64,000 bases of DNA, taken from Sminthopsis crassicaudata (taxonomy: Eukaryota). Made by a program: the position numbers and the translations under genes. The notes beneath the pieces were generated by a model. It saw only the letters and a list, made by a program, of their open reading frames with translations. It did no database searches and was not told the DNA's origin. The DNA lies in assembly GCF_048593235.1 (NCBI RefSeq), contig NC_133621.1, forward strand, positions 280,013,238 to 280,077,237. The letters run 5' to 3'. Within the stretch, counting starts at the first letter, position 1. Each line of letters opens with the position of its first letter. Shown one piece after another: positions 28 through 37,084 of this stretch.

Positions 28-92
<65 letters not shown>

Positions 93-31560: not shown

Positions 31561-32174
31561 GCACTCTCTTCAGAGCAAATGACACAAAGTCCTTGTTCTC
31601 ATCATCCAGCTCACCTAAAGCATGTGAACATTGCCTGTTCTTTTTCCTTTTCCAATACCATTCAGTGAGAGAGGGTGCTTTTTCGACATCAGGCATTAGA
31701 GCAGACAGTAACAGGCTTTCAGATGATTAACTCATCTTTAATCAGCTTGCAGCTCTGCTAATAACTTGGCTATTGCTTTGATCTCCTATGGGGTCAAGCC
31801 AAAATTTCTTCCTTCCACATTGCTGGGTACAAACATCTTCTGAAGCCTTCGGTTTTGGCAATAGAGCAGAAAAGGAAAGCCACAAGGATAGATTTTAAGA
31901 AAGCTACCATGTCACCGCAGGTATCTTTTTTGTTAAATACTTGTTCACTAATGTGACACAAAGTGGACACTTAATAAGTTTATGATGGAAAATGTGTAAA
32001 TGATATCCAGTGCCCTTCCTTAGTGACAGTAACTTATTAAGCTTAACTTGTACAACTGAGATAGGAAGCAGTATCCTAGACCTAGAATTCATTTCTGGTG
32101 CATCTGATTTGTGGGCTCTAGAGAAGCATAAAATCTAGATCTACCCAGATACCTAGAAACACTCCCACTTAGCA

Positions 32175-32480
32175 CAATGCTATTGCCTCCTGATTTTTCC
32201 TTCTCTTTCCCCCTTCATTCCTCCGTTTCTCCTTCCCTTCCTTTCTCCTTTCCTCTGTCCCTTCATTCTTCTTTGCTTTCCTCTCTACCTTTCTCCCTTT
32301 TTCTTTATCTCTTTCTTCCTGTCTACTATTTCTTTCTTCTACCCTCTCTCCTTTTCTCCTTCCTTTTCTCTCTCCCATCCTCTAACTTCCCATCCTTTCC
32401 TCCCTCCCTTTCTTCCTCCTTTTCTCCTTGCCTTCCTTCTTTCCTCTCCATTTTTTCTTTCCTTTCTTCTTTCTCCTTCC
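32175..32480. repeat. Polypyrimidine (CT-rich) low-complexity tract
   Basis: Seen directly; a similar tract lies at 59885-60150. Confidence 0.9.
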
Positions 32481-35400
32481 ACTGTACATAACTTGCCTCA
32501 TACTCATTCAACACCTTGTATAATCCTTTTCCATCCAGGATATCTCAGCACTCTCCCCATTTCCCAGAAGAAATAGCCTAAGAGAATCAGGAAGTGATAC
32601 TTCAGCTCAACTTTGAAGGTTAGACTTAGAAGAATATACTCATCACATGGTCAAAAGCCTGAGCAAAGGTTTGAAATGGCAGATATAATATCTTGTAAGA
32701 GAAAGAGACGAAGGGGCTGTTTGATTCAAATATTTGTTATTGTTGTTCAGTTTTCAGTTATGTCCAACTTTTCATGACACCATTTGCCATTTCCTTCTCC
32801 AGTTTTTTTTTTTTTTTTTTTTTTTAATAGATGAGGGAACTGAGGCAAATAGGGTCAAAGTGACTTGCCTAAGATCACACAGCTAGGAATTTTCTGGATC
32901 TAGGAAAATGATTGCCCAATTATAGAGTGTATAAAATAGAGTAATCTGTAATAAGCCTGGGAAGGTAGGCCAGAACCAGACTGTGTGGATTTTTATATAA
33001 CAAAGAGAAGAATGAATACTTTTATCTTCCATGCAGCCCCTGGAGCTTTTTGAGTCCAGGAAGTGTTTTGATTAGATCTCTTCTTTAGGAGGCTTTGTGG
33101 TGCAGGGATAGAATTGGTGCTAGAAGACATTGGAGACCAGGAAACCATTGAGAGTCCAGGGGAGAGGTGATGAGAGCTTGTGTGACTGGGGAGAAAGGGA
33201 CATATATACAAATTATCCTGGAAGTAGAATCAAGGACAAAATTGGTAACTCCTTCATAGGATCATAGATAGATTTTTTTTTAGCTAAAAAAGAACTTTAG
33301 AGATATTTTGTTTGATATCCCTGCCCCCCCTCTTCTGTTTTACTGACGAAAAAACTGAAACCCAGAGATACTAAGTGACTTGCTAGGTTTGTCCAAATAG
33401 TAAGTGTCTGAGGCAGCACTTGAACCATGGCCTTCCTGAATCCAAGCCCAGGACAAAGGAGGAGGGGATTGAGGCATCAGGGATGAAAGGGGCAGCACAC
33501 CAGGGCAACTCAGAGGATGTGGGTGCCCTTTGGAGAAATAGGAATGTTTAAAAAAGAAAAGGCTTTAGAGAGAGAGAGAGAGATAATGAATTCTATTTTG
33601 GCCATGCTGAATTGGAAGTGCTTATTAAGTATCTATTCACTCTATTACTGGGAAAATTGAGTTAGACAGAAAACTGTCTTCTGAGGACAGTCTGAGATAG
33701 CATTGAGCTGGACAGATGTATAAAGGTGAGGCAGACACAGATGGTCATTTATTTTGTTTTCTTTTTCTTTAAAAACAATTTCTAATGTAACAAAATAGAA
33801 AAAAAAATAGAAAATAGAACCTAAAAATGGGGCTATATATGAAACTCTGAGTCTCTTTTCCACATGGCTTGCTTATCTTTAATTTTTGTATTATCCAAAT
33901 AGCAACTTTTTGTTCCAATATTTTCCACATATCTGACACTTTCTTTTTCAAAGTGGCCAATAATCATAGTTGACATTGAAATGATACCTTTTATCATTTA
34001 AACATAAAGCACCTAAAAATCTGGTCTCTCAATGTAAAAACCGAAAGGTGGATGATAGCAATTATGTTCTTACAGTGACATTGAAGCAGATAATGAAGAT
34101 ATGGAAGTAAAAATTGCTCATTCCCTCTGATGCTCCATCATGGGGATGGCTTGTACTTCTGGGTCAAAAAGCATCCTTAAATAGTTATAGGGGAAAGGCA
34201 GCAGAGCTTTCAAGTTATTTAGTATAATCTCTTTATTTTATAGATAGGAAACAGATTCATAAAGCTTAAGTCTCTCTTGACTAAGGTTGTCTTGACAAGT
34301 TCCACTTGACAAGTGAAAGCAAAATTGACTAAAGCTAGAGATTCCTTATAGGGATCCATTGGAGCTTGTTGAGGTGGGGAACCAGCTGCTAAGTCCTGTG
34401 CTTCAGAATGCTCATCTTGGCAATAGTGATTGCCTATTATTATGTTTCTTTGCTTCATGAATTGCTATGGCCAAGAAATTCATCACTAATGGCCACCTAC
34501 TGGTAATGAACCTCCCCATGGAGGAGGCTCATTACCAGTAGGTGGTCTTGTCTGGTCTCAGACAGGAGATGCAGTTTGCTAAAACCCACAGGAGCTTGGA
34601 TTCACTCAGCATTTCCTTTGGGAATCCAAGGTCATTTCCATACCATAATGAAACATTGGGGTAAGATTCTTGTTCAGGGGAAGGATCTCTAGAGGAATTT
34701 TTAATTTTTTATTCTTAAGGATAGAGATTATCTGATCACATTTATAGGCAGAAAAAGGATAGATTGAATAACAGATTGGACTAGATTGAAGAAATGATCA
34801 GCAAGGAAGGCGTAGAATACAAATTGACATTAATAGGGAGGAGCCACGTTATTCTTAGATTGGAATAAAGAGAGAAGTGCTGAAGAAAGAGATTTCAAGA
34901 AATGCCAGATAGGGATAAGGAGAATATTCACAGTGAATGGTCTTGATTTCTTCAAAGGTCAATTTATTAATCAATAAACATTATTAAGGGCCTTTTATAT
35001 GCGCCAAGCACAGTGCTAAGTGTTGGAGGAGGATGTCAAGTCATCTTCTGAGCATGAAGGAGGGAGCACTTATTAAGTGCCGGGTGTATACTGAGTACTT
35101 TCCAGGTTCTGGGATTATAGAGAGGGAAATGAGATTCTCCCTGCTCTTGAGGAACTCACATAATTACACATACTTATATGTGTACATATAATATTTATTA
35201 TATATAAATATAGGATAAATAAAATAAATTTGTTGTTATTCAATCTTTTTTTAGTTATATCTAATTCTTTATGACCATATTCTTGGCAAAGATACTAAAG
35301 TGGTTTGCCATTTCCTTCTCATACATACACATATATATATACATACTTACATATATACATATGTGCACATATATATGACCTATATCCACATGTTTATCAA

Positions 35401-37084
35401 TTGTGTGTGTATGATAAATGTGTATATAGTGGTACTAAAGTATCCATCAGACATGAATAAAATAATTGCCAAGTAGCAGTCTGGGGCCATTAGAATCTTG
35501 AGAACCTGGATTTTCAATAGAGCCAGCCAGCCAATTAGACATATTTCTGTTTCTTTCCTTAGTAGATCATGAATAGGAACAGAAAGGGTACATGGTGGGC
35601 TTGATCCAGAGTTAAGAATGAAGAGATAAAAAGTTGAAGGACCAGAGTTTTAAGGATGCAAGACTAGGTCTTATTGAGATGATGGATTGTCTCAAGAATG
35701 TTAAATGGGGAAAGTAAACCCCCAACCTTCTAATGAGGAGAATCAGCAGGCCTGGATGAAGATGAAGAGTAAGTTTATAAAGATGTGAAATGAAGGGAGG
35801 GTGAAGTGTGCCACATGGAATCCAAGCAGGAGTCCTACCTCTTCTTTAGTTTTCATCTTGTCCTCAAAAAGCAATTTTTAAAAATCCCTTTTTCCTAGTC
35901 CTTAGCATTTCTTTATCTTTGTTTTATTTTCCATTCACTGCAGGTTCTGGGCTTTAGTGTTTTCTATTATTATTCTTACAGGGATGCGCTACCCTCCTAT
36001 ATTCATCCTCTGGGTCCTACCCCTTGACCTCCATCCTTTATATGTCTTCTTTTTAATCTGAGATGGTTGATGAGTTTCCCCAGTAACAACACACATCGTT
36101 TATCTCTCTTGGTTTTAGGAAGACAGACTGATTTCTCCTGTTCTTTCTTTTTGAAAGTACTTATTGAGTACCTACTAAGTACAGGAACTTTTACTATAGG
36201 AGATGGAATAGACCTAGTATCTACTCCTCAAGTAGTTTATAGTCTAGTTGGGGGGGGGGAGATTTTAAGGGGATGGAGAAGGAAATACTAATTGAAATGT
36301 ATTTGGATTAGTTCTGCTTATTATTATTATAAATGTATTAGGATGTGTTCTGTGAAGGCTTCATAGAAGTCTTGTGGGATCTTGGTCAAGTCAGAATCTT
36401 TCTGGACCTCAGTTTCCTCAACTATAAAACTAGATGATGTTTTCTTCCATCTTAAATCCATAATCCTACGATGATTCAGTGGAGGAAAGAGGGGTAGGAA
36501 GTGCTTAAAAAAAAAAAGAAAAAATCATGTAACCTTTTAGACCACATGTGAATTGAACCACTGGGAGGTTGTTCAGTCACGACCCCACTTGGGATTTTCT
36601 GAGACAAACAGGGTTAAATGACTTGCTTAGAATCTGAAGCTAGATTTGAACACAGATCTTCTTGATTCCAGACTCAGTGCTCTATTGTGCCACCTAACAG
36701 CTGTAAGAAAGAGGCAAAAGATGTGGCAATAATTCATGGGGGAAAGACCTGAATTCTAAAGGACTTCAAGTTCGGTTAGCCAATAGTGTGATGCTGGGTT
36801 TTGATAGTTGAAGATAAATCCCCTGAACACTTTCTTTTACTATATGATGCTCCACTGTCTTGGGACATTTCCTTAAAAAAGCAAGAAATGTAAGAATAGA
36901 ACTGGGGTGTAGTATCACAGACATGAAGAGTCGGACTGGATTGGAAAGACGAACAAACAGCCTCATCCTAAAGTCCCAATACAAGGGCTCAATCTGAAAG
37001 CAAACCAAGATTCCCATTAACAGTTAAAGCGGTTTTCCCCAGAAACTTTTGTTAATTTGTTGATTAATCAATGGATGAATTTGA

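What the first reader, a model, noticed from the sequence alone, without database searches (positions are those of the whole stretch)
34491..34547. Pre-miRNA-like hairpin with a perfect 17-bp stem in mid-intron
Seen: ccacctactggtaatga (34493-34509) is the exact reverse complement of tcattaccagtaggtgg (34529-34545). Inside are an A.C mismatch, 5 more pairs (cctcc/ggagg) and a 7-nt loop (ccatgga); outside are a G.U and a G-C pair. Total is about 57 nt. It is not low complexity and not within a repeat I recognise. A rough uniform-base estimate (64 kb x about 20 spacer lengths / 4^17) gives about 1e-4 by chance. On the sense strand of the PLXNC1 intron it could be a lineage-specific intronic miRNA or endo-siRNA source. 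Alternatives are a recent template-switch inverted duplication or the core of a palindromic MITE. Caveat: the stem is about 25 bp, shorter than the roughly 33-35 bp typical of Drosha substrates. I do not recognise it as a known miRNA.
Basis: seen in the sequence. Interest (0 to 1): 0.7.

Follow-up and report, generated by a model that had tools for sequence, protein, structure and literature searches.

The report
Neutral inverted-duplication hairpin in an intron
The hairpin is real and not a chance match, but it looks like a scar of a DNA-copying accident (one arm copied backwards from old repeat-derived sequence) that has drifted at the neutral rate in five related species, and nothing tested supports a microRNA gene.

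Summary
Observation confirmed. The arms 34493-34515 and 34523-34545 pair over 23 nt with one A.C mismatch, around a 7-nt loop. RNA MFE is -45.4 (+) and -47.5 (-) kcal/mol, z -7.5 and -9.1.

I laid contigs of four related species (about 6% diverged). All four carry the hairpin at the orthologous place. It differs from the window as often as its flanks do (3-4 of 57 against 26-29 of 419 sites, Fisher p = 1.0). Every arm difference is lineage-specific and breaks or weakens a pair, and none is compensatory. Taken back, the repeat was 23/23 perfect shortly before the species split.

The 5' flank and 5' arm belong to a low-copy dispersed repeat. Paralogous copies run through the 5' arm to 34516 and then diverge. 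No other place in any of the four genomes covers the 3' arm. So the 3' arm is a later reverse-complement copy of the 5' arm, most likely a replication template-switch mutation. This is a described source of perfect hairpins (PMC10710096, PMC8794818).

The stem stays at 25 bp in longer context, which is too short for Drosha. There is no Rfam match at threshold and no MITE signature. Small-RNA evidence could not be tested.

The scan has noted other perfect inverted repeats elsewhere in this genome. None of those notes shows a follow-up.

The parts
34493..34515 (+). 5' arm of the inverted repeat. Inferred to be the source (older) arm, continuous with dispersed-repeat sequence upstream.
   Evidence: In one search, paralogous contigs align over 34461-34508 (records 6, 14, 30). 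By-eye alignment of their loose ends to the window shows similarity up to 34516.
34516..34522 (+). 7-nt loop (CCATGGA). It holds the 6-nt palindrome CCATGG, a possible switch microhomology (inference only).
   Evidence: Loop differences in relatives are 34519 T>C (B, C, E) and 34520 G>A (E).
34523..34545 (+). 3' arm. Inferred to be the later reverse-complement copy of the 5' arm. It keeps the older state C at 34528, opposite the window's derived A at 34510.
   Evidence: In one search, only the orthologous contig covers bins 34516-34553 in each of four genomes, and the paralogs diverge after 34516.
34491..34547 (.). Whole hairpin including the two outer pairs (G-C and G.U). It folds on either strand.
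34440..34492 (.). Piece of a low-copy dispersed repeat (family not named) that runs into the 5' arm. It includes a small 7-bp stem-loop of its own.
   Evidence: the depth pile-up at 34440-34496 is 7-14 times the orthologous contig, from many contigs of 41-48 nt at 80-90% likeness in all four runs.
34546..34567 (.). Small adjacent stem-loop (6 perfect pairs around GTCT, up to 9 pairs counting a wobble). The stem exists in this form only in the window's species.
   Evidence: all four relatives differ at 34549, 34555, 34557 and 34563.
34611..34667 (.). Second piece of dispersed repeat downstream. It is context only and is not an inverted copy of the first piece.
   Evidence: pile-up on different contigs from the first. 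(no similarity between the two pieces on either strand).

Best explanation
The hairpin is a mutational scar, not a gene. The stretch 34440-34516 descends from an old, low-copy dispersed repeat. At some time before the window's species (A) split from species B-E, a single event wrote a reverse-complement copy of 23 nt of that sequence 7 nt downstream of it. The event was most likely a replication template switch, in which the growing strand briefly copies the opposite or its own strand and then returns. It created a perfect 23-bp inverted repeat. Since then both arms have drifted at the neutral rate. Lineage A changed G to A at 34510, which gives the A.C mismatch. The B-E lineage changed C to T at 34494 and lost the C at 34530. 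Species D also changed G to T at 34502. If the intron is transcribed (not tested here), its RNA would fold into a 25-bp hairpin. No known step would release or process such a hairpin in mid-intron, because it lacks the roughly 35-bp stem that Drosha/DGCR8 measures. What is shown: the repeat, its presence and differences in four relatives, equal divergence in hairpin and flanks, and paralogs that share the 5' arm but not the 3' arm. What is inferred: the polarity of each change (by parsimony from a faithful copy), the single-event origin, and the mechanism (template switch rather than another fold-back repair).
For: Searches show the exact geometry and stability. One search puts the chance expectation for a 23-bp perfect repeat at 0.002 per genome. 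In one search, each of X13, X14, X16 and X17 has one contig across 34250-34800 (33-37 substitutions, 22 gap letters). Inside the hairpin these contigs differ from the window only at 34494 C>T (all four), 34510 A>G (all four, restoring G-C), loss of 34530 (all four, bulging G34508), 34502 G>T (D only) and the loop sites 34519 and 34520. One search gives divergence of 3-4 of 57 in the hairpin against 26-29 of 419 in the flanks, Fisher p = 1.0. One search shows the relatives' hairpins are weaker (-32.5 to -44.4 kcal/mol) and the inferred original stronger (-52.1 and -49.9, 23 of 23 pairs). No arm mismatch is shared between the lineages. In one search the repeat pile-up ends within the 5' arm, and only the ortholog covers 34516-34553. 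By eye, a paralog loose end matches the window 11 of 12 up to 34516 and then 3 of 12. It also carries G where the window has A at 34510, in agreement with the 3' arm. PMC10710096 and PMC8794818 describe template switching as a frequent source of perfect hairpins: over 6,000 in primates, with most of the miRNA-associated loci in sense introns.
Against: No species without the 3' arm was seen, so the state before the event is not observed. The polarity rests on effectively one paralogous locus plus the absence of other matches. All four relatives form one sister lineage, so the direction of each change is inferred by parsimony (3 changes against at least 5). It is not excluded that lineage A re-perfected two pairs, by selection or by a second template switch. 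About four substitutions per ortholog are not listed. They are probably near the ends of the stretch, where no differences are listed, but a hidden one in the hairpin cannot be ruled out. Template switching cannot be told apart from other fold-back or hairpin-repair routes with these data. Expression and small RNAs were not tested.
Confidence: 0.78

Rival explanations
1. A young, lineage-restricted small-RNA locus: a template-switch-born intronic hairpin that is transcribed with the host gene and processed into a miRNA or siRNA, still evolving almost neutrally as very young miRNAs do.
For: The hairpin is very stable on both strands and has persisted in five species. Two of the changes are tolerated in RNA as G.U on one strand.
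Against: The stem is 25 bp with a 7-nt or 3-nt loop and does not extend in 161-nt context. The stated preference is a 35-bp stem and a loop of 10 nt or more (PMC10710096). No Rfam family reaches threshold. No paper holds the arm sequence. Divergence equals the flanks, there is no compensatory change, and one relative has a stem-breaking G>T.
Confidence: 0.07
2. A fold-back product of double-strand-break repair, or a footprint of a hairpin-forming (hAT-type) transposon excision, rather than a replication template switch. The outcome is the same (a neutral inverted duplication) but the mechanism differs.
For: The geometry (an inverted copy directly beside its source with a short spacer) also fits fold-back priming at a broken end. 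Next to the hairpin, the lineages differ by a 20-nt indel at 34571 flanked by a 4-nt direct repeat, and by four clustered substitutions.
Against: From general knowledge, palindromic additions at excision footprints are usually a few nucleotides, not 23. No transposon end or target duplication is seen. The adjacent cluster is not significant after correction for about 32 windows.
Confidence: 0.08
3. The core of a palindromic MITE, or a hairpin that belongs to the dispersed repeat itself.
For: The 5' flank and 5' arm are part of a dispersed repeat.
Against: No contig other than the ortholog covers the 3' arm or the whole hairpin in four genomes at 80% likeness or more. The paralogs diverge after 34516. 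There is no other copy in the window. There is no direct repeat at the hairpin's borders. The two flanking repeat pieces are not inverted copies of each other.
Confidence: 0.03
4. A selected structural element that is not a small RNA, such as an intronic RNA hairpin acting on splicing or editing, or a DNA cruciform or pause site.
For: It has persisted in five species. Together with three smaller stem-loops it gives z -5.3 and -6.5 over 161 nt.
Against: The z-score is carried by the one hairpin. Stem-loop 1 is part of the dispersed repeat, and stem-loop 3 is not kept in the relatives. Divergence is at the neutral rate and changes break pairs. Persistence over about 6% divergence is what drift predicts (about 3 changes expected in 46 nt, 3 seen).
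Confidence: 0.03
5. A chance inverted repeat.
For: One of 90 composition-preserving shuffles of the window produced a 17-bp perfect stem. About 8 such stems are expected per 3.4-Gb genome.
Against: The repeat is 22 of 23 now and an inferred 23 of 23 at the split. The expectation for that is 0.002 per genome.
Confidence: 0.01

Closest known systems
Template-switch mutations (TSMs) that create perfect hairpins (Monttinen and Loytynoja, PNAS 2022, PMC8794818; Monttinen et al., PNAS 2023, PMC10710096)
   Same: A reverse-complement copy of adjacent sequence written a few nucleotides away. The pairing is perfect from one event. The reported location is a gene intron. The sequence had no prior hairpin. 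The product drifts afterwards.
   Different: The pre-event state is not observed here, since all species examined already carry it. The origin is argued from paralogous repeat copies, not from an ancestral reconstruction. No small-RNA product is known.
Canonical animal pre-/pri-miRNA hairpins
   Same: A stable stem-loop of about 57 nt in what is reported as an intron. There is a weak, sub-threshold structural resemblance to the mir-627 model (31.9 bits).
   Different: The stem is about 10 bp too short and the loop is short. The flanks fold into other small hairpins instead of forming a basal stem. There is no conservation signal, no family match and no read evidence.
MITE-derived miRNA hairpins (for example MADE1/miR-548; from general knowledge)
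   Same: A near-perfect palindrome involving repeat-derived sequence.
   Different: Only one arm is repeat-derived. The whole hairpin is single-copy in four genomes. There are no terminal inverted repeats with a target-site duplication.

Membership tests
Canonical miRNA precursor (Drosha/DGCR8 substrate) | Stem of about 35 bp with an unstructured apical loop of 10 nt or more (as stated in PMC10710096) | tested here: not met
   25 bp including a mismatch. The loop is 7 nt (+) or 3 nt (-). The stem does not extend in 161-nt context.
Canonical miRNA precursor (Drosha/DGCR8 substrate) | Match to a described miRNA family | tested here: not met
   The best Rfam hit is mir-627 at 31.9 bits against a gathering score of 86. 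No hit reaches gathering score anywhere in the window. miRBase and MirGeneDB species-specific entries are not available here.
Canonical miRNA precursor (Drosha/DGCR8 substrate) | Stem conserved more than the flanks, or pairing kept through compensatory changes | tested here: not met
   3-4 of 57 against 26-29 of 419 substitutions, Fisher p = 1.0. All arm changes weaken pairs.
Canonical miRNA precursor (Drosha/DGCR8 substrate) | 21-23-nt read stacks from both arms with 2-nt 3' overhangs | not testable with these tools
   The run index works on 31-letter words of contigs, so small-RNA libraries cannot appear.
MITE / palindromic transposon | Many dispersed copies of the whole element | tested here: not met
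   Only the orthologous contig covers 34516-34553 in each of four relatives' genomes. There are none in the window. Genome A itself was not surveyed.
MITE / palindromic transposon | Terminal inverted repeats bounded by a target-site duplication | tested here: not met
   The letters directly outside the arms (34485-34492 and 34546-34553) share no direct repeat.
Template-switch mutation product | Target segment is the exact reverse complement of a source within tens of nucleotides | tested here: met
   22 of 23 now, an inferred 23 of 23 at the species split, spacer 7 nt.
Template-switch mutation product | Source present and target absent in the ancestral or outgroup sequence | tested here: inconclusive
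   All four relatives already have both arms. Only paralogous copies of the repeat show the source arm followed by unrelated sequence.
Template-switch mutation product | Arises in one step, not by gradual accumulation | tested here: inconclusive
   No arm mismatch is shared between the two lineages, which implies a perfect repeat at the split. The step itself is not observed.

The most novel reading that the evidence does not exclude
The hairpin is a template-switch-born, marsupial-lineage small-RNA gene caught early. It would be transcribed inside the host intron and cut by a non-canonical route (Dicer acting on a short hairpin released by some other nuclease). It would have been kept for the time of about 6% divergence and perhaps re-perfected in lineage A by a second template switch.
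Probability: 0.05. Interest if true: 0.45.

Novelty: new member of a known kind. Interest (0 to 1): 0.15.

Why it matters
It matters little in itself. It is a clean, datable example outside primates and rodents of how one replication accident can write a perfect hairpin into transcribed DNA, which is the proposed raw material for new miRNA genes. Its arms record which changes came later. It also shows that a striking stem in an intron is not evidence of an RNA gene: the cross-species rate test separates the two readings cheaply. If small-RNA data later showed processing, it would add a marsupial case to the template-switch model of miRNA birth.

Tried and rejected
I looked for other copies of the arm and of 33491-35500, 34430-34520, 34600-34675 and 34300-34700 in the window, using pattern search with 3 mismatches and blastn with words of 9 and 7. 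There were none, so the repeat family could not be named from the window.

Six-frame translation of 34200-34800 shows no recognisable transposon protein. Stop-free segments of 70 aa or more across the window show no obvious exon, so the host gene and its strand were not verified.

Rfam gave only sub-threshold generic hairpin hits with permissive E-values on 33000-36000, and nothing at gathering scores on the whole window.

A full-text search for the arm sequences in DNA or RNA letters found 0 papers.

A metagenome scan with a 21-nt pattern of the 5' arm found one hit, L001. It lies in an AT-rich 380-kb contig with no other similarity to the window, so it is a chance match.

The cluster of four substitutions at 34549-34563 looked like a second template switch. 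It has P = 0.015 per 15-nt window, which is not significant over about 32 windows.

I checked whether the two flanking repeat pile-ups are inverted copies of each other, which would fit MITE ends. They share no similarity.

Full report
**Observation.** The repeat finder reports arms 34493-34515 and 34523-34545, 23 nt, 96% complementary, 7 nt apart. The only mismatch is A34510 opposite C34528. As RNA, the 77-nt stretch 34481-34557 folds at -45.4 kcal/mol on the + strand (z -7.46) and -47.5 on the - strand (z -9.11). On the - strand the mismatch becomes a G.U pair and the loop shrinks to 3 nt. None of 200 shuffles folds as well.

The hairpin is the only non-microsatellite perfect stem of 14 bp or more with a loop of 40 nt or less in the window. 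About 8 such stems are expected in a 3.4-Gb genome, and 1 of 90 block shuffles of the window produced one. The full 23-bp repeat is what excludes chance, at 4e-8 per window and 0.002 per genome.

**Is it a known RNA or a repeat in the window?** Rfam with permissive thresholds gives only a generic hairpin match to mir-627 (31.9 bits, gathering score 86). At gathering scores the whole window has no match. No paper in the library holds either arm. The window has no other copy of the arm or of the surrounding 2 kb.

**Related genomes.** The look-up of sequencing runs found the stretch in the window's own species (organism A; two samples that may be the source, plus other samples). It also found about a fifth of its words in organisms B, C, D and E. 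I spent the single read-laying run on one run of each relative at 80% likeness. Each has one contig across the whole of 34250-34800, with 33-37 substitutions and 22 gap letters, so these are orthologs about 6% diverged. All four carry the hairpin.

Inside 34491-34547 the orthologs differ from the window as follows:
- 34494 C>T in all four (T opposite G34544).
- 34510 A>G in all four (this restores a G-C pair with 34528).
- Loss of C34530 in all four (G34508 becomes a bulge).
- 34502 G>T in D only (this breaks a pair).
- 34519 T>C in B, C and E, and 34520 G>A in E, both in the loop.

The gap letters are fully accounted for: 1 at 34530, 20 at 34571 and 1 at 34655. About four substitutions per ortholog are not listed. 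No difference is listed within 37 letters of either end of the stretch, and about 4.5 are expected there. They are therefore probably at the ends, but this is a caveat.

**Rate and pattern.** Divergence in the hairpin is 3-4 of 57 sites, against 26-29 of 419 in the flanks (Fisher p = 1.0 for each species). About 2.9 substitutions are expected in the 46 arm sites between A and B, and 2 substitutions plus 1 deletion are seen. I rebuilt the relatives' hairpins from the window plus the listed differences. They fold more weakly (B and C -44.4/-39.1, D -37.0/-32.5, E -43.6/-39.1 kcal/mol). The state with G at 34510 folds at -52.1/-49.9 with 23 of 23 pairs. No arm mismatch is shared between lineage A and lineage B-E.

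If the repeat began as a faithful copy, the most parsimonious history has three later changes, each weakening a pair: one in A and two in the B-E stem lineage. D has one more. The reverse polarity, in which A regained two pairs, needs at least five changes. It cannot be strictly excluded without an outgroup, because B-E share most of their differences from A and so count as one sister lineage. A perfect repeat at the split implies that the event was not much older than the split. The probability of no change in 46 sites is 0.25 at 3% and 0.03 at 8% pre-split divergence.

**Which arm is older.** One search also shows two depth pile-ups made of many short pieces (41-48 nt, 80-90% alike) from other contigs, at 34440-34496 and 34611-34667. 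These are pieces of dispersed repeats. Matches of that length and identity are far beyond chance in a 3-Gb genome (my own estimate, not a tool result).

The first pile-up runs into the 5' arm. One paralogous locus, seen in B, C and E, aligns over 34461-34508 with 3 mismatches. By eye, the loose ends of paralogs continue with similarity to the 5' arm. One matches the window 11 of 12 over 34505-34516 and then only 3 of 12. It carries G at the position of 34510, as do the relatives and the complement of the 3' arm. In bins 34516-34553 the depth in every run equals that of the orthologous contig alone.

So the 5' flank and 5' arm are contiguous in the repeat family, while the 3' arm is found nowhere else. 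The 3' arm is therefore the later, reverse-complement copy. This rests on effectively one informative paralog plus an absence of matches, which I rate as moderately strong. The repeat family could not be named: there is no copy in the window, no recognisable protein frame and no repeat library at hand.

**Mechanism.** The pattern is an exact inverted copy written 7 nt from its source, in sequence with no prior hairpin, and perfect at birth. This is what replication template switching is described to produce. PMC8794818 shows it can create and maintain RNA hairpins. PMC10710096 counts over 6,000 suitable hairpins of this origin in primates and at least 18 human miRNA genes; most of its TSM-associated miRNA loci lie in sense-strand introns. 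I therefore read the hairpin as a template-switch scar. Fold-back repair of a break would give the same product and cannot be told apart here. The loop contains the palindrome CCATGG, which could have served as microhomology for the switch. That is speculation.

**Why not a miRNA.** The same paper states the preference of the processing machinery for a 35-bp stem and a loop of 10 nt or more. Here the stem is 25 bp and the loop 7 or 3 nt. In 161-nt context on either strand the stem does not extend; it is abutted by small independent stem-loops. There is no family match and no excess conservation. Very young miRNAs can evolve nearly neutrally, and small-RNA data could not be examined. I leave about 5-7% for a small-RNA locus.

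**Why not a MITE.** The whole hairpin is single-copy in four genomes. There is no target-site duplication at its borders. The two flanking repeat pieces are not inverted copies of each other.

**The 'four stem-loops' note on the same stretch (s1-180409).** The first small stem-loop lies in the dispersed-repeat piece. The third (34546-67) exists in this form only in species A, because all four relatives differ at 34549, 34555, 34557 and 34563. The low folding z-score of the 161 nt is carried by the main hairpin. I see no structured module.

**Not done.** No exon was evident in the window. Expression was not tested. The metagenome scan gave one chance match. Other notes of this scan report perfect inverted repeats elsewhere in this genome (s1-192242, s1-173126, s1-189972). 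As listed, they carry no follow-up, and they suggest only that such scars recur.

**Verdict.** This is a real, non-chance hairpin explained by a known mutational process and evolving neutrally. Interest is low. It is a new example of a known kind.

Noticed in passing
window 34549-34572: Directly 3' of the hairpin, all four relatives differ from the window at 34549, 34555, 34557 and 34563, each time reading A. In them a perfect 12-nt palindrome (34551-34562) replaces the window's stem of 6 pairs around GTCT. They also carry 20 extra letters after 34571. The extra letters begin with the same four letters (CAGT) as the sequence that follows them, so this looks like a microhomology deletion in lineage A. 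The substitution cluster has P = 0.015 per 15-nt window and is not significant after correction.
   Followed up: partly
window 35150-35420: A TA/CA-rich simple-repeat tract gives several sub-threshold Rfam hits to repeat-derived miRNA models (mir-297, mir-3149, mir-466, mir-1277 and others; 20-39 bits against cut-offs of 75-101). This is low-complexity palindromic sequence and no evidence of a gene.
   Followed up: no
window 35280-35320: A roughly 40-nt segment has many copies elsewhere in the window on both strands (82-90% identity at 1957, 62591, 53423, 22157, 41661 and others). It is probably the end of an abundant SINE or LINE.
   Followed up: no
window 32000-32500: A strongly pyrimidine-rich stretch on the + strand (GC skew -0.61, AT skew -0.47), which translates as long S/L/P/F-rich frames. 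It is a CT-rich simple sequence.
   Followed up: no
window 45-92: An (AT)n microsatellite accounts for almost all other 'perfect stems' of 12 bp or more in the window.
   Followed up: no
runs X19, X20 (organism F) and X7-X12 (organism A): Two metatranscriptomic RNA runs hold 14-15% of the sampled words of 33900-35100. Six runs guessed to be RNA hold 34-81%.
   Followed up: no
L001:2294-2314: There is an exact 21-nt match to the 5' arm in a 380-kb AT-rich metagenome contig (NPIE01001064.1) with no other similarity to the window. It is a chance match in a very large collection.
   Followed up: yes
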